From Hyaloraphidium curvatum SAG 235-1 (Eukaryota; Fungi; Monoblepharomycota): DNA of 64,000 nucleotides. Shown here one piece after another: positions 4,536 to 13,065 of this stretch (position 1 is its first letter; every line of letters starts with the position of its first letter). A model generated the notes under the pieces. The model saw only the letters and a program-made list of their open reading frames with translations. It ran no database searches and had not been told where the DNA came from. Both the position numbers and the translations under genes were made by a program. Location of the stretch: the NCBI GenBank assembly GCA_025558095.1, contig JAIVFI010000023.1, forward strand, positions 635,275 through 699,274, given 5' to 3'.

Positions 4536-7500
4536 ATGGCAGCGGCGGCTTCGCTGTTTGGCGCGGTGCGGCGGGGCGACGCGGCGGCGGTGCGGGCGCT
4601 GCTCTTCCCGGGCGAGGCCGGCGGCGAGGACGAGCTGCCGCCGCTGTCCAGCTCGCTGCCGAGCGGCGGCAGCCTCGGCGGGAACCCCAGCCGCTGGATC
4701 AACGCCGCCGATGCCGCCGCCCAGCGCACACCGCTGCACGCGGCCGTGGCTGCCGGACACGCCCACATCGCAGCCCTGCTGCTGCGGCACCCGCAGACGA
4801 ACCCCGCGCCGAAGGACGGCGAATCGGGCTGGACGCCGATGCACCGTGCCGTGTATGCCGGCGACGTGGGCATGGCCATGCTGCTGGCGAGGCACAGGGG
4901 GGCGAACCCCACCGAGAGGGACAAGGAGGGCAACTCGTGGGCCGACCTGCTCAACTCGACCTACGAGGGCTCCAAGCCGCGCTCGTCGAAGGCCAAGGCG
5001 TCCTCAAACACGCAGCCTGCCTCGAAGAGGCAGATCCCGACCGGGCAGCGCCTCCTGCCGCCCTCGACAAAGTTCCTTGCGCCGTCGGCCCAGACCACGC
5101 CCAACCACTCGGACGACTCGGACAGCGGGGATGAGGACGCGTCGGACGACGAGCCCGAGTTCGCTTCGCTCTCATCCTCACCGCCCCGCAACGGCAAGCC
5201 GCGCCGCCCGCGCCCCGGCGCCGACACCGACGTGCCCGCGGCCCACTCCCTCTGGACCTGGGGCGCAAACCACAACTTTGTCCTCGCCCACGGCACTCCC
5301 GACTCGCGGCAGTTTCCCGAGCGCGTGCAGGACCTCCCCGCCGGCGTCCCCTGCTCCCTCGAATCCCTCGACTCCCACCTCCCCGCAGTGCGCGACGCCC
5401 GCATGAGCAAGTACCACGCCTGCGCCGTGCTCGCCGATGGTCGCCTCTTTGTCTGGGGTTTCGGCTCGTCTGGCCGCCTGGGGCTGGGTCCCGAGGTCGC
5501 GGGGCCGGTGCTCCGCCCGGCGCTGCTCGCGGACGGGGTCCGAACGGCGGCGCTGGGGACGGACCATACACTGGTCGTCACCGTCTCGGGGGCGCTGCTG
5601 TCGTGCGGGGCCAATGCTGCGGGGCAGCTGGGGTACCCGACCGAGGTCAGGGGGGACGCGGTGCAGCCCGAGTGGAGGCTCAAGGAGGTGATGCGACGGG
5701 GGGTTGTCGGGTGCGCGTCGGGCAAGGAGCATTCGGTGTGCTGGACCGACTCGGGTGCCGTCTTCACGTGGGGCAAGAACGGCGGGATGCTCGGTGGGTG
5801 TTCGCGAACCTGATCTCCGCGTTCATCTCGTTTGCTGACTGCGTTTGTCCCGTCATTAGGACACCACAACCTGCCTCCGAACGCCATCGTCGCCACTCCC
5901 CGCAAGCTCGCCTCTTTCCACTCTCCCCAGGTCCTCCAGATCGTCTGCACCTCCTCCGCCACCGCCATCCTGCACGCTCCCACCCCGCACGAGCGCGCCG
6001 TCCTCGTCCTCTCCAACGGCGAGCACCACCGGGTCTCCTTCCCCGTCGCCCCCTCCTTCCCCCGCCACATGCGGCACTACACCTCATCCTCCCAGCTGGA
6101 GCAGCAGCGCCGGCACGGCACCGCGCGGCAGCACCGCATCGCCCGTCTCGCGGCTGGGAACCACCAGTTCGCCGCGCTGACCAGTGCGGGGGAGGTTTTC
6201 CTCTGGACGCCGCCACAGGAGGGGTTCGAGAATACCTGGGTGCACCAGACCTTCCCGCAGGCCAAGCCCAAGCGGATCTGGGCGGTGCGCAACCGCGCGT
6301 GGCTGGCGGCAAGGGACGTGGCGGTGGGGATCGACGGCGCGATCGCGGTGGCAACGCGGTCGGGGCACGTGTTTGCGGGCACCCGCCGCGACAAAGCCAA
6401 GCAGCGGCCCGCGGCGGACCGCGGCGCGGGCGAGACGGACGTGGTCTACTTCAAGTACAGGCAGGTGCCGCTGCTACAGCACGCCACGAGAGTGGTGGCG
6501 TCGGCTTCGGGCGGGTTCGGCGCGCTGCGGGTGGACGAGAGGCCGGGGGGGAGGGCGAACGGCGAGGCGGGGAGGCTGAGGAGGGAGCTGGGGAGGTTGG
6601 TGGACGAGGCCGGGGACGGGGACATCGCGCCGGACGTGGTGATCGAGGTCGAGGGGCTCAAGGGAACCGAGGAGATCGGGGCGCACAGGTGCATCCTTGC
6701 CGCACGGTCGTCGTACCTGCGCGGGCTGTTTGAGCGGGCCGGGGGGCTGCCCGTGGGCGGGAAGCTCGACGGCGAAGGCGGGGTCACGGTTGAGAGGCTC
6801 CTGCAGGACAATTCGGAGGAGGACAGGCCGGCCCTGCGGGTGGCGATAGCGGGGGTCTACTCGCAGAGCGTGGTGCCGCTCCTCCAGCTCGCCTACTCGG
6901 CTTCCTTCTCCAAGACCTGGGACCACACGGCTTTCTCCCCCGAGGGGCGGCAGCGCAAGGGCGGGGCCTCCAAGGGGCCGACCGCCGCGACTGTTTACGC
7001 GGACTTCCGCCGCCTGGTCAGGCAGTTCGGCCTCGGCGACCCGGACGTGGCGCAGTTCTCGCAGGAGCAGGACCGCCTCTCGCGCGAGCACTCCCAGGCC
7101 ATCATGTCGCTGGTCGACGTTTCGGCGGCGGCCAAGCGACCCTCCGTTCTCCCCGACACCGTGCTCCGCCTCGCGGACCGGGACGTCGAGTGCCACCGCG
7201 CCATCCTCGTGGCGCGCTGCCCCTTTTTCCACGCGATGCTGGGCAGCGGACCACGCTGGGCGCTGCAGCGCGACGAGCGGGGCAGGGTGGTGGTGATGCT
7301 GGAGCACCTGCGGTGGGAGGTGGTCCGCATCCTGCTGGCGTGGATGTACGGCGACGGCGGCGCGGCGGAGCTGTTTGCCGACGTGCGGACGCCCTCCGTG
7401 GGCTCCTTCTCGGCGTTCTTGGTCGAAGTGCTGGCGGCCGCGACGGAGCTGCTGCTGACGCAGCTCAAGGACGTGTGCGGTTCCATCCTCGTGCGCACGC

Positions 7501-8982
7501 TAGATCTGCGCAACGTGAGGCAGCTACTCGAGACGGCGGACACGTACGATGCCGAAGGTCTAAAGCACGCCTGCCTGGATTTCGTATGCTGGAACTTGGA
7601 ATCGGCGATCGAGACGGGGATGCTCGAGGGCATGGAGCCGGACCTGGTGGAGGACGTGTCGGTGCGGCTCCGCGAGATGCAGGCGGCAAAGTACCCCTTC
7701 ATCCGCGGGGAAGACGGGTACTACGCCCAGATAAAGCGCGAGGCGGCGCGCGTGGAGGAGGAGAGGAAGCAGCGGCGGCGGGTGGACTTTGGGGAGCGAA
7801 AGAAGCTGGAGGAGCTGTCGCGGTCGCTGGACGACAGCACCATCAACCAGCTGATCGCCAACGGGGCTTTCGATCCGCAGCCCGCGGCCGAGCCGGAGGG
7901 CGGCAGCAGCGACGATGAGCGCCTGGACAAGCCTGGGAGGATGCCACGAAGCAGCTCGGGGAGGAACGACGACGACATCTTCGAGCTCGAGATGGAGGAC
8001 GGGCAGGGCAGGGAGGCGCAGGCGCAGGCATCTCCTTGGGCCAAGTCTGCTCCGACGGCGGCGCCCGCGAGGCTGCTTTCCTCGCCGCCGCCCAAGGCCT
8101 CTGCCAACAAAGTGGACGGCGGGGCGGGTTCCAAGCGCGCGCCGAAGGCTGCCTGGAAGAAGGTCGACCTTACCACGGGCAAAGTGGTCGAAGATGAGCC
8201 ACCTGCCGCACCCGAAGCGGCCAAAGGCGGTCTCGTCGGAGGGTCAACCCAGACGTCGCCCGCACCGCCAAAGACCTGGAGCATCCCCGTCGTCGCCAAG
8301 CCGTGAGTTTTGTGAGACCCAGCTTTCATCCGTGCCTCGTTGACGCCTTCTTTGCCAGCCAACGCACGTCGCTCCTGGACATCATGTCCGAGACTCAATC
8401 CAAGTCTTCCAAAGCACCCTCACGCGCCCCCAGCCTCAGCTCCAGCCCCGCGGCGCCCCTTCCCCCCGCCCCCCGCAACGTCACGCCACCCTCCGTCTCC
8501 GGCACGGCACCGCGTGCCGTGCGGTCGAGCACCTGGACGTCGACGTCTTCCACCTCAAACCCCACGAGCCCCATGGCATCTCCGCCGCCCTCGGCCATCC
8601 TATCGCAGCTCGCGCAGCAGGGAGGCCCGCCCTCCATGGCCACCCTCTCACTGGGCAGTACTGCTGCTTTCGTCACCTCATCGGGCAGCCAGAAGGACCG
8701 CCGCAAGAGCGCGCGCAACGCGGCCGGCGGCAGCCCCGTGCTCGGTCCCACAGCGGCGGCGGCGCCCAAGGCGTGGAAAGGCTGGGCGCCGATCGAGGTG
8801 CCTCCGCCGGCGCCGTTGGCCACCAGCCCACCTCGGCCACCCAGCCCGACGACGCTGGCTGCCAGGCTGAGGGAGTTTCCGGCCATTTCGGGGTCTTCCA
8901 AGGAGGCGCCCGGCCGAGAGAAGGTCTGGTGATTGTTCTGTCTCGCAAACTGTTTCAGACGCAGGCCGCTGTACATATCTGA
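4536..8982 (+). CDS. Ankyrin-RCC1-BTB-BTB protein (IBTK / S. pombe Btb1-like Cul3 adaptor)
   Basis: Ankyrin repeats (TPLHAAV, ESGWTPMHRAVY), RCC1 repeats (WGFGSSGRLG, GANAAGQLG), two BTB domains (AHRCILAARSSY, CHRAILVARCPFF) and a low-complexity tail. Introns at ~5795-5860, ~8303-8358 and possibly ~8923-8958; the 3' end is uncertain. Confidence 0.88.
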
Positions 8983-9229
8983 TCGCGGCCACCTGCTGCT
9001 GCTGGCTCTTGGCACACCTGATGTATATGGAATCTGAATCGACGCAGTTCTTGCAGCTCTTCAAGGGGGATAGCGGGTAATCTCGATGACGACTTGATCT
9101 AGTCGGACTCAGGATCCCTTGCGGAACCCCCGAACAACGTCAACAACAGTGTGCGCCCACTGAACAGCGCCGCCCGGTAACTGCTGGTGCCGGAGAGCAT
9201 CTAAGTGTCTCTGTCGACACCGCACAAAG

Positions 9230-10813
9230 ATGGACGCCAATTCGGCCGTGGACTCGGCCGTAGACGTCGACGCACCGCCGTCGCCAACGCGGCTCGTCGG
9301 CGAGCTGCAGGAGACGCGGGCGACGCTGAAACGGACCCAGGCGACCCTTCGCCGGGCCGAGGAGCGCGCCCACGCCGTCGAGCAAGCAGTCGCGCCCTTC
9401 CTCCCGCGTCAATTCGTCGAGATCCTCGGGAAGTCAGACTTCACCGAGATTCGCCTCGGAGACGCCCGGGAGTCGAAGTTGACTATCTTCTTTCTGGATA
9501 TCCGCGGATTCACGACCCTCGCGGAGGGCATGACTCCGGCGGAGGTGTTTGCCTTTGTCAACTCCTTCTTCGCCGCGCTGGTCCCAGAAATCGAAGCACA
9601 TCGCGGTTTCGTGGACAAGTACATTGGCGACGCCATTATGGCGCTGTTCCCGGGGGGCCCGGGCTCGCCCTCGGGTGCCGAGGATGCGATAGCCGCCGCC
9701 AACGCGGTGCTCGCCGCGCTGGACAGGTTCAACGCGGCCCGAGAGGGCGTCCCCGTTCGCGTGGGGATTGGTCTCAACACGGGCCCGGCAATCGTGGGCA
9801 CCGTGGGCACCGGGGAGAGGATGGAGACAACGGTCATTTCGGACGCCGTGAATCTGGCGTCGCGGCTCGAGAGCCTGACAAAGGTGTACGGCGTCCCACT
9901 CATCATCTCCGAGGCCACGCTGTACGCTTTGGGGCATCTCCCAGGGCCGACGACCAGGTTCCTGGACCGGATCAGGGTCAAGGGGAAGAACCAGCCTCAT
10001 TCCATCTACGAGTTGTTCGACTCGGACCCGGAGCCGCTGCGGGAAGCAAAATCTCGGACCAGGACGATGTTCGAGGAAGCCGTGGCGCTGTACGCGCACA
10101 AGGACGCCGCAAGGGCGCTCCCCCTCTTTGAATCCTGCCTGAAAGAGGCGCCGCAGGACCTCCCCGCGATGGTCTACACAGACCGGTGCCGTGCGTTCCT
10201 CGCCACGGGCGCGCACGAGGGCAGCGGCGAGCTGCTGGCGACCACGCCGTGGCGGGACGAGTTCACCGTCGGTGTGGACAAGATTGACGAGCAGCATCAC
10301 GAGCTACTTGATGCGTTCAATCGGTTGGCCCCTTGCCTCACGGGCGGCGACGCCGAAGAAGTCAAGGACGTTCTGGCCTTCATCGACAGCTACGTCAACG
10401 ACCATTTCGGCATGGAGTACCACCTGATGAAGGATCACGACTATCCTTTCATGCAGGAGCACCTGCGCGAGCACCGCAGCTTCGTGGAGCACTTCCGGAG
10501 ACTCCGCGAAGACATCGAGTCGCGGAGACACGCACAGCCTTTTCTTGTCTTCATGATTCAGACGCTGCTGATCGATTGGTTCGGTGAGTGAGGCAACGGG
10601 CTTCCAAGCACGATAAGAGATCATCATCTGACTCTCCGATCCCCAGCTAACCATTCGACCGGCACGGACCGGCACCTGGCCAAGTTTCTGCGGCGGCTTT
10701 GGGACGGGCGCAGCCGGTCGCCATCGGACGAGCGGCCGCCCGAGATCGTGGACGGGGTGGCGGAGATGAACGTGCCGGAATGGTCGGCGCTAACAGCGAC
10801 AAACCCGCAATAG
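9230..10813 (+). CDS. Class III adenylate cyclase with a TPR-like helical region and a C-terminal hemerythrin domain
   Basis: Cyclase motifs FLDIRGFT, DKYIGDAIMA and TVISDAVNLASRLE. Hemerythrin motifs W...G...IDEQH, HFGME and HLREH, and after removing intron 10584-10646, WFANHSTGTD. Confidence 0.9.
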
Positions 10814-10867
10814 ATCAAGGTCCACCTGCGTCGATCCGACCCGACTTTTGTCTATTGCATCTGTCGA

Positions 10868-13065
10868 TCACAGCTTCCCCTGCGGTGCCCGCTCGACAAT
10901 GTAGTGCTCGTACTCGGGCGCATAGATGGCGCGGTGGTGATGGAGACCGCTCCCCGGCCACATGATGAGGTAATTGGATTCGCGGTCCTGGTAGCTGCAC
11001 GGCGGACACGGCCAGTCAGCATGTGGTTCCCGTGCGCGGCGGTGTACCCACTATCCCCCGCACGGCTCGATCCAAACGGAGCCCTTGAGGAACTCCTGCG
11101 CCTCGCGGTCGAACCGGTCCACCTCCTCCCGCTTGACCTCGTAGCTGAGGATGGTGGAGTCGCACTGCCACCTGACGATCATCTGGAAAGCCTGCGGGGC
11201 CACGAGGGGTGCGGTCAGCACGGGCGAGGACATCCGGCGCGCGGAGCAGCCCCCACATAGTTGATCTGCTGCTGCGTGGAAGCGAAGATTGAGTTCTGGG
11301 TCTTGGGCGGGTACGGCCCCTGGTCGGAAGAGCAGGTCGGATGCGCAGCTTCCACGAGCAGCACGAAACCAACCATGGTATAGAAGAAATTCGGAAAGCC
11401 ATCCACAGTTACGCTCCTGTACGCGGTCGGATGCGGCTTGAACCTCTCCCACAGATCCTTGCCGCCGCGCCCCGTGATCTTCATCCGCGGGTTCTTGTAG
11501 GTCACGTCGAACCCCGTCGCGGTCACCAGCAGATCCAGCTTGGTTTGCTTCTCTGCGCCATCCGCGCCGCGGGTGATCACCCCCGCCTCGTCGATCCGCA
11601 CGATCGGTTCGCGGTTCACCGTAACCCAGGGCATCTGGATGGCCTCGAGGAACGGGGTCGTGAGGGTGTAGCGGCGGCAGCCGATCGAATAGGATGGCAT
11701 CTGCGAGGGCAGGTAAGCAAAGCAAAGGGGAGGCGCGAGCAGCGAGGCTCACCAGGCTCTCGAGGAGCGCTTTGTCCTTGATGTTCTTGTGCATGTGCTC
11801 GATCGCCTTGGCCTGGAGGACCTTTTGGACCCTCGAGCCGGGGAAGTAGCCGGTGAAGGCCTTCTCGCCGGCCACGTAGCCCTCGAGCGCGTATCGGTAA
11901 AACCCCTTCGGGTCGTTCAGCACCTTCTTCATCTCCGGCGTGAGCTTCATCGGCGAAGTCTCGGGGAGGATGTAGCTCGCTGGGCAGATCGTGAGCAATG
12001 GCTTCGCAACGGAATAAGCTCAGAACCCACGCGTCCGCATGAAAACCGTCATGTGCCCATCCTTGACGACGGGCGAAAGCGCGCCGACGACCTGCATCCC
12101 AGAGCTGCCAGTGCCGATCACCCCGACGCGGTCCGTCGGCTTAACGACCAGGTCCTGCGGCCACTGAGCCGTGTGCACCGAGTTGGGGAATAGGTCGAAA
12201 CCGGGAATGGCGGGCTTCTTGGCGCGGTTGAGGAACCCGGTCCCGAGTATCACAAAGTCCGCCTCGTCGGCCAGCCGCCCGCCACGCGTGTCGACGGCGA
12301 TCCGCCACTTCTTCTTGTCCTCCAACCACTCGAGCTCCCTGACCTCGGCCTCTAGGGTGGTGTTCGCAAGCACGTTATACTTTTTGGCAACGAAATCGAA
12401 GTAGCGCATGATCTCCGGGCCTTTCGCGTATCCCTCCGACCAGTCGTTGTTCTCGAAGCGGAATGTGTACGAGTAGGAGGGCACGTCGCAGCGTACCCCT
12501 GGGTACCTGTTGTGCACCCTATGGCGCGGTGTCAACGCCGTGTCGAGACGCCGGATGCGGGCACCCACCAAACTCCTCCAAACAGCGAGTTCATCTCGTA
12601 TATCCTGAAGGTGGCATTCTTCAGGCGCCACTGGGCCATGATGCCGAAGCTGATCGGGGAGGGAATGGCACGTCAGATCCCGATTCCTCCTACTCGAAGG
12701 GACGACGGCGCCCACTTTATCCCCGCCATCCCTCCGCCGACAAACACGATCCGTACGGGCCGCGGATCATCGGAGGTGTACTCCGGCTCCGGCGAGAAGG
12801 CCATCAGCTCGCGCTCCGGGTCAGGAAGGTAGAGAGGTTCCAACGGGTGCGTCGCGGGGGTCACGAGCGAGGCGCCGCGGTACATCCCGTAGGGGTCGGC
12901 GCGCGAGAAGCCGCGCGGGTCTCGGGCCACGCGGCCGCCCGCCGTCTCGTCGCCGCTCGCGAAGTCGCCGGGGCGCAGACCGGGCGGGAGCACCGGCCGC
13001 GGGAACGCGGCGGGGAACCGCTGCGACTGCGGGAACGCGGGCTCCGGGCGGTCCGCCGCCGCCAT
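10868..13065 (-). CDS. Baeyer-Villiger/flavin-containing monooxygenase, multi-exon
   Basis: FAD motif GGGMAG, NRYPGVRCDVPS, BVMO fingerprint FPNSVHTAQWP, NADP motif GTGSSG, ATGF. The last exon ends ...WPGS...PQGKL*. Confidence 0.88.

What the first reader, a model, noticed from the sequence alone, without database searches (positions are those of the whole stretch)
9230..10813. Intron-containing adenylate cyclase-hemerythrin fusion: candidate eukaryotic O2/redox-sensing cAMP source
Seen: a soluble protein (no TM helix) with an N-terminal coiled coil and a class III cyclase carrying both metal Asp residues, the ATP-specifying Lys (DKYIGD) and Thr, and NxxxR. This is followed by a TPR-like helix pair and a hemerythrin domain. 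The ORF track stops at ...IDWFGE, but removing the GT-AG intron at 10584-10646 gives DWFANHSTGTDRHLAKFL, completing all di-iron ligand motifs (H, HxxxE, HxxxH, HxxxxD). Established: bacterial hemerythrins act as O2 sensors on chemoreceptors and diguanylate cyclases, while the canonical fungal cyclase (Cyr1) is a large LRR-PP2C protein quite unlike this one. Inference: a bacterial class IIIb cyclase was acquired horizontally, gained an intron, and couples O2/NO/iron status to cAMP in a fungus-like organism.
Basis: partly seen in the sequence, partly recalled or inferred. Interest (0 to 1): 0.85.

Follow-up and report, generated by a model that had tools for sequence, protein, structure and literature searches.

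The report
Bacterial-origin hemerythrin adenylate cyclase in a chytrid
A chytrid-grade fungus (Hyaloraphidium curvatum) carries a spliced, transcribed gene, taken whole from bacteria, that joins a cAMP-making enzyme to an iron-based oxygen/redox-sensing domain. It is a plausible but untested direct oxygen-to-cAMP sensor in a eukaryote.

Summary
Window 9230-10583 plus 10647-10813 (+) encodes a 506-aa soluble protein with four parts: a coiled coil, a class IIIb adenylate cyclase, a three-helix TPR-like linker and a bacteriohemerythrin. It equals the deposited Hyaloraphidium curvatum protein P0001. A cDNA-like contig removes exactly the proposed 63-nt GT..AG intron. Splicing restores the last two di-iron ligands (H454, D459).

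All catalytic residues and all seven iron ligands are present. Folding gives a confident model, and a dimer prediction passes its controls.

The gene lies among eukaryotic, intron-bearing genes on a 699-kb contig. Even so, both domains nest with strong support inside one bacterial clade at 60-66% identity, next to Anaeromyxobacter-like sequences. The whole fusion was therefore transferred from bacteria.

New here:
- There are two more paralogs in the genome, and two further eukaryotic sources, one of them a chytrid.
- All eukaryotic copies share a 6-7-aa insert and a C-terminal tail.
- Their introns sit at different sites.

Regulation by O2 or redox state is inferred by analogy with Bhr-DGC and DcrH. 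No hemerythrin-coupled class III cyclase was among the sensors listed as characterised in the 2022 review I read.

The scan had not followed this gene up before. Only a first-reader note on the neighbouring gene cluster mentions it.

The parts
9230..10583 (+). Exon 1 (codons 1-451 plus the first base of Ala452); ATG at 9230
   Evidence: ORF list and sequence. Identical to residues 1-451 of deposited protein P0001. The cDNA contig is continuous from 8600 to 10582/3, so there is no further intron.
10584..10646 (+). Spliceosomal intron, 63 nt, GT..AG, phase 1, with a CTGAC branch-like motif
   Evidence: The X1 contig skips 63 nt, GT..AG with the cut at +1. Sequence. Bacterial homologues are collinear across this site (DWFANHSTGTDRH), with no gap.
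10647..10813 (+). Exon 2 (last two bases of Ala452, residues 453-506, TAG stop at 10811-10813)
   Evidence: Translation. Identical to the C-terminus of P0001.
9284..9391 (+). N-terminal helix, residues 19-54, predicted parallel coiled coil
   Evidence: AF2 helix 19-54. Dimer prediction contacts at heptad-like positions 22, 26, 29, 33, 36, 40, 43 and 47. Foldseek best matches are the helix-plus-cyclase of OaPAC and bPAC.
9464..10015 (+). Class III (subclass IIIb-type) nucleotidyl cyclase catalytic domain, residues 79-262; D90, K130, D134, T201, N208, R212
   Evidence: PF00211, 63.7 bits. PDB profile hits CyaB 3r5g (1e-38), Cya2 2w01 and CyaC 1wc0. Residue alignment and conservation.
10031..10207 (+). 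Three-helix TPR-like linker, residues 268-326, with invariant C303 and C320
   Evidence: AF2 helices. TPR_19 and TPR_2 are below threshold. Invariant columns. The cyclase plus this linker also occurs without hemerythrin in many bacterial proteins.
10250..10702 (+). Bacteriohemerythrin domain, residues 341-470, interrupted by the intron; ligands H356, H392, E396, H411, H415, H454, D459
   Evidence: TIGR02481 scores 95.2 bits and NF033749 scores 91.9 bits (cut-off 84) on the spliced record P0001. Exon 1 alone scores 77.2 bits, below the cut-off. Alignment to DcrH-Hr. Four-helix bundle 350-470.
10703..10810 (+). Eukaryote-specific C-terminal tail, residues 471-506, predicted disordered; motif RLWDGRSRSP is shared with the other eukaryotic copies
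   Evidence: pLDDT of about 40-70. The tail is absent from bacterial homologues and present in P0002, L002, C29 and C36.

Best explanation
This is a nuclear, transcribed, two-exon gene of Hyaloraphidium curvatum. It descends from a bacterial cyclase-TPR-bacteriohemerythrin gene whose donor was close to a Deltaproteobacteria/Myxococcota-like lineage. The fusion was transferred as one piece. It then took on the host's codon bias, gained a 6-7-aa loop insert and a C-terminal tail, duplicated, and acquired spliceosomal introns.

The protein most likely works as a cytosolic homodimer. A parallel N-terminal coiled coil holds two class IIIb catalytic domains head to tail, which forms two ATP sites at the interface. 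These sites use metal ligands D90 and D134, adenine-selecting K130 and T201, and transition-state residues N208 and R212.

Each subunit carries a C-terminal di-iron hemerythrin joined through a rigid three-helix linker. By analogy with Bhr-DGC, Bhr-HD-GYP and DcrH, oxidation or O2 binding at the di-iron site would change the four-helix bundle. Through the linker, that change would alter cyclase activity, so cAMP output would follow oxygen or redox state.

Shown here: the gene structure, the splice, the residues, the fold, the phylogenetic position and the genomic linkage. Inferred: the dimer (prediction only), ATP specificity, iron binding and the O2/redox control.
For: Gene and splice:
-. The cDNA contig skips 10584-10646.

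Eukaryotic setting:
- The contig is 699 kb.
- Neighbours are an RCC1-BTB-BACK gene, a MYND gene, and an FMO-like gene with three spliced introns.
- GC3 is 0.82, against 0.89 for the neighbour. The Logan copies match their own hosts at 0.68 and 0.62.

Bacterial origin:
- After P0001, the best hits are bacterial proteins annotated 'bacteriohemerythrin', at 60-66% identity.
- P0003 sits in a dense bacterial contig.
- The cyclase tree places the 5 eukaryotic rows with P0003-P0009 at 100/99, sister to an Anaeromyxobacter-like group at 97/89.
- The linker-plus-hemerythrin tree recovers the same clade at 93/96.

One origin in eukaryotes:
- A 6-7-aa insert is shared by all eukaryotic copies and absent from the bacteria aligned.
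- The C-terminal tail motif is also shared.
- The AU tests do not reject eukaryote monophyly (p = 0.51 and 0.49).

Acquired as a unit:
- The only three TIGR02481 domains in the genome are those in the three fusion genes.

Function-related evidence:
- Catalytic and ligand residues.
- AF2 model with pLDDT 91 and pTM 0.88.
- Homodimer score 0.54 against a best control of 0.00. The runs agree in at least 93% of contacts, and the partner pLDDT is at least 80. In calibration the mark was reached by 21 of 30 solved homodimers and 0 of 23 monomers. The interface is the coiled coil plus residues 76-134 and 188-207, which include K130-D134 and T201.
Against: - No biochemical datum exists for any class III cyclase-hemerythrin protein in the library I could search.
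- The dimer pass may reflect the model's memory of solved class III dimers.
- The trees do not resolve eukaryote monophyly. C36 floats among the bacterial rows, so a second transfer is not excluded.
- The donor is named only through MAG labels.
- Run X1 is labelled RNA only by a guess. Its RNA nature rests on four exact GT..AG-type skips.
- In known bacterial hemerythrin sensors the direction of regulation differs with context, so the sign of the response cannot be predicted.
- Class IIIb enzymes are often bicarbonate-responsive (my own knowledge), so O2 need not be the only or main input.
Confidence: 0.6

Rival explanations
1. The cyclase is active, but the hemerythrin domain does not sense O2. 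It may report iron availability, NO or H2O2. It may serve only as a structural or dimer-stabilising module. Bicarbonate/CO2 may be the real regulator, as in other class IIIb cyclases.
For: Hemerythrin-like domains have varied roles, including iron sensing in FBXL5 and peroxide responses in mycobacteria (abstracts; PMC9388753). T201 is the class IIIb marker shared with CyaB and CyaC, and those enzymes are bicarbonate-responsive by my own knowledge.
Against: The domain passes the bacteriohemerythrin subfamily model. Its closest solved relative is the O2-reactive DcrH-Hr, with all seven ligands kept. These ligands are invariant or nearly so across 60 homologues, which argues for a working metal site.
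Confidence: 0.25
2. The gene is an ancient eukaryotic or fungal gene inherited vertically and lost many times, not a horizontal acquisition.
For: It is present as several diverged paralogs. It also occurs in at least two other eukaryotic sources. The Hyaloraphidium paralogs are not each other's closest relatives, so the family is not young.
Against: The eukaryotic rows sit inside a shallow bacterial subclade at 60-66% identity, itself nested within thousands of bacterial homologues. No other named eukaryote appears among the best 120 hits in 5.8 billion proteins. Introns are at different sites in each copy.
Confidence: 0.07
3. Two or more independent transfers from related bacteria produced the eukaryotic copies, for example C36 separately from the C23/C29/Logan group.
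For: In both trees C36 does not join the other four eukaryotic rows. In the cyclase region it is most similar to P0003, at 72%.
Against: C36 shares the loop insert and the RVWEE-type tail with the other eukaryotic copies. These features are absent from the bacterial rows aligned. Holding all five eukaryotic rows together costs only 0.1-0.6 log-likelihood units.
Confidence: 0.12
4. The gene is bacterial contamination or an assembly chimera, and is not fungal.
For: Top similarity is to bacteria, and the GC content is high.
Against: The contig is 699 kb, with flanking eukaryote-type genes (RCC1-BTB-BACK, MYND) and an intron-bearing neighbour. A canonical 63-nt intron is removed in cDNA. Two paralogs lie on other contigs with host-type 62-64-nt introns.
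Confidence: 0.01

Closest known systems
Bacterial cyclase-TPR-bacteriohemerythrin proteins annotated 'bacteriohemerythrin' (e.g. P0003 from a Deltaproteobacteria MAG; Anaeromyxobacter P0016; Desulfatibacillum P0097)
   Same: Same three-module order, collinear over the whole length, at 44-66% identity. All catalytic and iron-ligand residues are shared.
   Different: The fungal copies have a spliceosomal intron, a 6-7-aa insert after the FPG motif, a 35-aa disordered C-terminal tail, and host codon bias. None of the bacterial proteins has been characterised in the literature I could search.
Vibrio cholerae Bhr-DGC and Ferrovum Bhr-HD-GYP (hemerythrin-regulated c-di-GMP enzymes)
   Same: A bacteriohemerythrin domain is fused to a dimeric nucleotide-signalling enzyme. 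Their activity depends on the diferrous or diferric state (PMC9388753). This is the functional model used here.
   Different: In those proteins the hemerythrin is N-terminal and the output is a GGDEF or HD-GYP domain. Here it is C-terminal, joined through a TPR-like linker, and the output is a class III cyclase making cAMP.
DcrH of Desulfovibrio vulgaris (MCP with a C-terminal hemerythrin; PDB 2avk, 3waq)
   Same: It is the closest solved hemerythrin domain (E = 4e-25 with the family profile). All seven ligands align, and the domain is C-terminal.
   Different: DcrH is a membrane chemoreceptor, not an enzyme.
Class IIIb adenylate cyclases CyaB (P. aeruginosa, 3r5g) and CyaC (Spirulina, 1wc0), and the photoactivated cyclases OaPAC and bPAC
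   Same: Same catalytic fold and the same Lys/Thr substrate pair. The helix-plus-cyclase arrangement matches OaPAC and bPAC.
   Different: The sensor modules differ: MASE2, BLUF or others, against hemerythrin here.
Fungal Cyr1 and the rhodopsin-guanylyl cyclases of Blastocladiomycota and chytrids
   Same: Class III catalytic domain. The rhodopsin cyclases (PDB 6aoa, 5oyh, in the hit list) show that early-diverging fungi use direct sensor-cyclase fusions (my own knowledge).
   Different: There is no LRR, PP2C, Ras-association or rhodopsin module. The protein is soluble, 506 aa long, and of recent bacterial ancestry.

Membership tests
Class III nucleotidyl cyclase (PF00211) | Profile match above the curated threshold | tested here: met
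   63.7 bits against a cut-off of 21.9, residues 81-255.
Class III nucleotidyl cyclase (PF00211) | Two metal-binding Asp, plus the transition-state Asn and Arg | tested here: met
   D90, D134 and N208 are invariant and R212 is at least 90% conserved. They align with the same residues of CyaB, Cya2 and OaPAC.
Subclass IIIb adenylate cyclase | Substrate-specifying Lys paired with Thr instead of Asp | tested here: met
   K130 aligns with the Lys of CyaB, where the guanylyl cyclase Cya2 has Glu. T201 aligns with the Thr of CyaB, where Cya2 has Gly.
Subclass IIIb adenylate cyclase | Homodimer with active sites at the interface | tested here: inconclusive
   The prediction passes: 0.54 against a best control of 0.00, at least 93% contact agreement, and pLDDT of at least 80. 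In calibration the mark was reached by 21 of 30 solved homodimers and 0 of 23 monomers. The interface includes residues 130-134 and 190-203. It is a prediction that may draw on solved relatives.
Subclass IIIb adenylate cyclase | cAMP synthesis from ATP | not testable with these tools
   This needs an enzyme assay or cya complementation.
Bacteriohemerythrin (NF033749 / TIGR02481) | Profile match above the curated threshold | tested here: met
   The spliced record P0001 scores 91.9 bits on NF033749 (cut-off 84) and 95.2 bits on TIGR02481 (cut-off 51.75). Exon 1 alone scores 77.2 bits on NF033749, below the cut-off.
Bacteriohemerythrin (NF033749 / TIGR02481) | Seven di-iron ligands: H, HxxxE, HxxxH, HxxxxD | tested here: met
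   H356, H392/E396, H411/H415 and H454/D459 align with H23, H59/E63, H78/H82 and H118/D123 of DcrH-Hr. They are invariant or at least 90% conserved.
Bacteriohemerythrin (NF033749 / TIGR02481) | Four-helix bundle | tested here: met
   Helices 350-372, 375-402, 408-431 and 436-470, with pLDDT of about 95.
Bacteriohemerythrin (NF033749 / TIGR02481) | Binds two iron atoms and reacts with O2 | not testable with these tools
   This needs metal analysis and UV-vis or resonance Raman spectroscopy.
Hemerythrin-coupled signalling enzymes (Bhr-DGC type) | Catalytic output depends on the di-iron redox or ligand state | not testable with these tools
   There is only the analogy to PMC9388753.
Bacterium-to-eukaryote transferred gene | Nested with support inside a bacterial clade | tested here: met
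   The 12-row clade has support 100/99 in the cyclase tree and 93/96 in the linker-plus-hemerythrin tree. It lies inside wider bacterial diversity.
Bacterium-to-eukaryote transferred gene | Physically integrated in the eukaryotic genome and processed as a eukaryotic gene | tested here: met
   Eukaryote-type neighbours and a cDNA-confirmed intron.
Bacterium-to-eukaryote transferred gene | Patchy distribution among eukaryotes | tested here: inconclusive
   Only P0001, P0002 and P0010 look eukaryotic among the best 120 hits. The search is limited by length and by available gene models, and no eukaryote genome collection could be scanned.
Fungal Cyr1-type adenylate cyclase | LRR and PP2C modules N-terminal to the cyclase, and a large size | tested here: not met
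   There are no LRR or PP2C matches, and the protein is 506 aa.

The most novel reading that the evidence does not exclude
This would be the first eukaryotic adenylate cyclase gated directly by a hemerythrin di-iron centre. It would be an oxygen/redox-to-cAMP pathway captured from bacteria, expanded to three paralogs in Hyaloraphidium, and present in other chytrid-like fungi. Such a pathway would give these aquatic fungi a one-protein oxygen sensor independent of the usual fungal sterol- and haem-based routes. It would also be the first biochemical handle on a bacterial family with thousands of members.
Probability: 0.4. Interest if true: 0.65.

Novelty: new variant of a known kind. Interest (0 to 1): 0.5.

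Why it matters
Hemerythrin-coupled sensors are documented for chemotaxis, c-di-GMP turnover and a metal pump, but not for cAMP. The cyclase-hemerythrin architecture is abundant in bacterial genomes yet uncharacterised.

A domesticated eukaryotic copy gives three things:
- A clean, well-supported case of whole-gene bacterial transfer, with later intron gain at several different sites in paralogs.
- A testable candidate for direct O2/redox control of cAMP in an early-diverging fungus.
- A small soluble protein suited to biochemistry, and possibly to use as an oxygen-responsive cAMP tool.

If the hemerythrin proves not to regulate the cyclase, the finding shrinks to an ordinary, already annotated transferred gene.

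Tried and rejected
- Contamination or chimera: rejected.
- Co-transfer of neighbouring genes: the seven genes flanking the closest bacterial homologue P0003 (L093), including its adjacent SnoaL_4 gene, have no tblastn match anywhere in the window.
- Synteny or close kinship of the two Logan contigs with Hyaloraphidium: a neighbour protein from L001 and one from L002 find nothing in G000. Seven neighbour ORFs have no Pfam family.
- Organism of L001: placed only through its DUR3 gene, which is 66-68% identical to Cladochytrium, Nowakowskiella and Spizellomyces. L002 remains unidentified.
- Search for fragmentary eukaryotic homologues with the C36 exon-2 product: one 188-aa hit only.
It returned 36-47% relatives (Gallionellaceae, Rhodocyclales, cyanobacteria) rather than the nearest clade, so it did not name the donor.
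- Representative-library search: it shows the size of the family (7705 representatives at E <= 1e-30) but no new eukaryotic members.
- Tree resolution inside the 12-row clade: the branching stays open. Eukaryote monophyly is neither shown nor rejected.
- Literature: no paper in the held library describes a class III cyclase-hemerythrin protein, or hemerythrin in chytrids.
- L001 'intronless': not claimed. I could not determine the library type of that Logan run, and the contig could be cDNA-derived.
Searches were run exon by exon by reference, and the joined product was used only as the deposited record P0001.
Full report
**1. The observation**

The + strand ORF 9230-10591 encodes 453 residues ending in IDWFGE plus a stop. 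Bases 10584-10646 form a 63-nt interval. It begins GTGAGT, ends CCCCAG, and has a CTGAC motif 17 nt upstream of the AG. Read from 10649, the downstream frame gives NHSTGTDRHLAKFL and runs to a TAG at 10811-10813.

The protein search returned a deposited 506-aa record, P0001, named 'adenylate/guanylate cyclase [Hyaloraphidium curvatum]', on a 699,274-bp contig. Its sequence is exon 1, one Ala made across the junction, then exon 2.

Searches were run exon by exon by reference, and the joined product was used only as the stored record P0001.

**2. The splice is real**

One public run holds this stretch (X1, 0.94 of the sampled words). Laid on 8600-11400, a single 7906-nt contig of that run is identical to the genome except for four skips:
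- 63 nt, GT..AG, at 10582/3 to 10646/7.
- 57 nt, CT..AC.
- 65 nt, CT..AC.
- 54 nt, CT..AC.

The three CT..AC skips lie in the minus-strand gene downstream, between 10994 and 11373. Four exact consensus-bounded skips, on the correct strand for each gene, mean the run is cDNA, although its record only guesses 'RNA'.

The contig is continuous from 8600 to 10582, so exon 1 has no further intron. Contigs cannot give expression level, and no second data set was available.

**3. Domains and residues**

Pfam on exon 1:
- Guanylate_cyc, residues 81-255: 63.7 bits against a cut-off of 21.9.
- Hemerythrin, residues 348-433: 39.4 bits against a cut-off of 25.3.
- TPR_19: 19.7 bits against a cut-off of 25, so below threshold.

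NCBIfam shows the effect of splicing. The bacteriohemerythrin subfamily model NF033749 scores 77.2 bits on exon 1 alone, below its cut-off of 84. It scores 91.9 bits on P0001, and the TIGR02481 match then covers profile positions 2-126 of 126.

In a 60-sequence alignment:
- D90, D134, N208, H356, E396, H415, H454 and D459 are invariant.
- K130, T201, R212, H392 and H411 are at least 90% conserved.

Against solved structures, K130 and T201 align with the Lys and Thr of P. aeruginosa CyaB. The guanylyl cyclase Cya2 has Glu and Gly at these two positions. That is the ATP-type, class IIIb residue pattern.

The seven ligands align one-to-one with H23, H59, E63, H78, H82, H118 and D123 of DcrH-Hr.

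**4. Fold and assembly**

AlphaFold2 with the 60-row alignment gives mean pLDDT 91 and pTM 0.88. The model contains:
- A helix at 19-54.
- An alpha/beta cyclase core at 79-262.
- Three helices at 268-326.
- A four-helix bundle at 350-470.
- A disordered tail from 471.

Foldseek's best matches are the helix-plus-cyclase portions of OaPAC and bPAC, then CyaC, CyaB and Cya2.

A two-copy prediction (residues 18-475) scored 0.54 against a best control of 0.00. The runs agree in at least 93% of contacts, and the partner pLDDT is at least 80. In the tool's calibration this mark was reached by 21 of 30 solved homodimers and 0 of 23 single chains.

The predicted interface is a parallel coiled coil (contacts at 22, 26, 29, 33, 36, 40, 43, 47) plus residues 76-134 and 188-207 of the catalytic domain. 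Those ranges contain K130-D134 and T201. This is the canonical class III arrangement. Since such dimers are solved, the pass shows likeness rather than proof. The linker and hemerythrin are not in the confident interface.

**5. Where it sits**

The window is G000 contig C23:635275-699274, from a 32-Mb genome in 55 contigs.
- Upstream lies an RCC1-like/BTB/BACK protein (5832-8303).
- Further upstream is a MYND-finger protein.
- Downstream, on the other strand, is a flavin-monooxygenase-like gene whose three introns are spliced in X1.

GC3 of the gene is 0.82, against 0.89 for the BTB neighbour. Contamination is therefore excluded.

**6. Where it came from**

After P0001, the next hits are mostly proteins with the same architecture, annotated 'bacteriohemerythrin' or 'hemerythrin'. 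They are 44-66% identical over about 90-98% of the query. Where a source names an organism, the labels are:
- Deltaproteobacteria MAGs
- Anaeromyxobacter
- Holophagaceae
- Rhodocyclaceae
- Hydrogenophaga
- Desulfatibacillum
- Desulfobacula

The closest named one, P0003, lies 17 nt downstream of its neighbour in a densely packed bacterial contig. The exhaustive library holds 7705 cluster representatives at E <= 1e-30.

I built separate maximum-likelihood trees for two regions.

| Tree | Region | Columns | Support for the 12-row clade | AU test of eukaryote monophyly |
|---|---|---|---|---|
| Cyclase | residues 50-286, insert columns removed | 230 | 100/99 | p = 0.51, costing 0.11 lnL units |
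| Linker + hemerythrin | residues 289-450 | 162 | 93/96 | p = 0.49 |

The 12-row clade holds the five eukaryotic rows plus P0003-P0009. In the cyclase tree it is sister to an Anaeromyxobacter-like group (97/89), and both lie inside wider bacterial diversity.

The two domains therefore share one history. The fusion is bacterial and was transferred whole.

Inside the clade the branching is open. Four eukaryotic rows group at 89/92 and 93/86, and C36 floats among the bacterial rows.

Two characters kept out of the trees favour one origin. All five eukaryotic copies have a 6-7-residue insert after the FPG motif, and all have a C-terminal extension with an R[LV]W[DEG]-type motif. The bacterial rows aligned lack both.

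**7.

The genome holds two further full-architecture paralogs:
- C29:570648-571919 (-), 56% identical.
- C36:474028-475367 (-), about 60% identical.

The only three TIGR02481 hemerythrin domains in the genome are the ones in these three genes. There are about a dozen class III cyclase-domain matches in all.

Two Logan contigs also carry homologues:
- L001 (P0002, 65% identical, locus GC 56%). Its neighbour is a DUR3-type urea transporter, 66-68% identical to those of Cladochytrium, Nowakowskiella and Spizellomyces, so it comes from an unsequenced chytrid.
- L002 (P0010, locus GC 54%). The organism is not identified.

Each copy's GC3 matches its own genome.

**8. Introns**

Every interruption is GT..AG and restores collinearity with the bacterial proteins, but the sites differ.

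| Copy | Intron site | Length |
|---|---|---|
| C23 (this gene) | phase 1, after F451 | 63 nt |
| C29 | phase 2, inside the preceding Trp codon, 5 nt upstream of the C23 site | 64 nt |
| C36 | phase 1, in the Trp of the FEEAVAW motif | 62 nt |
| L002 | phase 1, in the Ala of NLLAPCL | about 173 nt |
| L001 | none seen | contig may be cDNA-derived, so nothing is claimed |

The three Hyaloraphidium introns all carry CTGAC some 15-20 nt before the AG. Different sites in a gene whose bacterial relatives have no introns are what gain after transfer predicts.

The near-coincidence of the C23 and C29 sites is unexplained. It could reflect sliding of one old intron or two insertions into the same region. 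Only the C23 intron has cDNA support.

**9. How it most likely works**

The following steps are inferred, not shown. The coiled coil and catalytic interface make a constitutive dimer with two ATP sites. The hemerythrin bundle, tied to the catalytic core by the rigid three-helix linker, changes with the state of its di-iron centre and shifts activity.

The basis is the behaviour of characterised relatives (PMC9388753):
- Bhr-DGC is about ten times more active in the diferrous form than in the diferric form.
- Bhr-HD-GYP is active only when reduced.
- DcrH-Hr binds O2 and autoxidises rapidly.

That review lists DcrH, Bhr-DGC, Bhr-HD-GYP and a P1B-5 ATPase as the characterised hemerythrin sensors, with no class III cyclase among them. 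The 2016 survey of hemerythrin architectures highlights MCP and GGDEF fusions. It found O2-binding hemerythrins in only four of 135 eukaryotic genomes, none of them fungal (PMC4919030).

The sign of the response, the true ligand (O2, redox state, NO or iron), and any bicarbonate effect typical of class IIIb enzymes cannot be read from sequence.

**10. Verdict**

It is extended here in four ways: transfer of the whole fusion, a small gene family, other chytrid carriers, and several independent intron sites. The physiological part remains a reasoned hypothesis.

The gene is already annotated generically, and its architecture is common in bacteria, so it is not categorically new. It is a new variant of hemerythrin-coupled signalling (cAMP output) found in a eukaryote. 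I rate interest at 0.5.

Noticed in passing
G000:C29:570648-571919 (-) = L004; G000:C36:474028-475367 (-) = L005: Two further cyclase-TPR-hemerythrin paralogs, 56% and about 60% identical. Each has one inferred 62-64-nt GT..AG intron. The C29 intron lies only 5 nt from the C23 site, in a different phase, although the two genes are not sisters in the trees.
   Followed up: partly
window 10136-10138 and 10187-10189 (C303, C320): Two cysteines in the three-helix linker are invariant across all 60 aligned homologues. Their role, whether as a redox-active pair, a metal site or packing residues, is unknown.
   Followed up: no
window 10995-11372, minus strand: The downstream flavin-monooxygenase-like gene has three short introns of 57, 65 and 54 nt, all removed in the same X1 contig. 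That contig merges transcripts of at least three adjacent genes on both strands, which implies overlapping UTRs in a compact genome.
   Followed up: partly
window 5832-8303 (+): A long ORF with an RCC1-like repeat region, a BTB/POZ domain and a weak BACK match lies immediately upstream. The S/P-rich ORF 8303-8932 may be its C-terminal continuation.
   Followed up: no
G000:C24:123410-124183 (+) = L007/L008; also C13, C16, C25, C27, C5: The genome has about a dozen class III cyclase-domain matches. The C24 copy shares the cyclase-plus-TPR-like module (33-44% identical, within a 1195-aa open frame) but has no hemerythrin.
   Followed up: no
L001 (Logan SRR23967301) and L002 (Logan SRR26194948): Two unnamed eukaryotic sources carry the same gene family. 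L001 comes from a chytrid, judged by its DUR3 neighbour. Hyaloraphidium itself gave no DUR3 match with that query.
   Followed up: partly
window 10703-10810 (tail residues 471-506): The eukaryote-only tail contains RSRSPS, a basic Ser/Pro-rich stretch that could be a phosphorylation site. This is speculation from the sequence alone.
   Followed up: no
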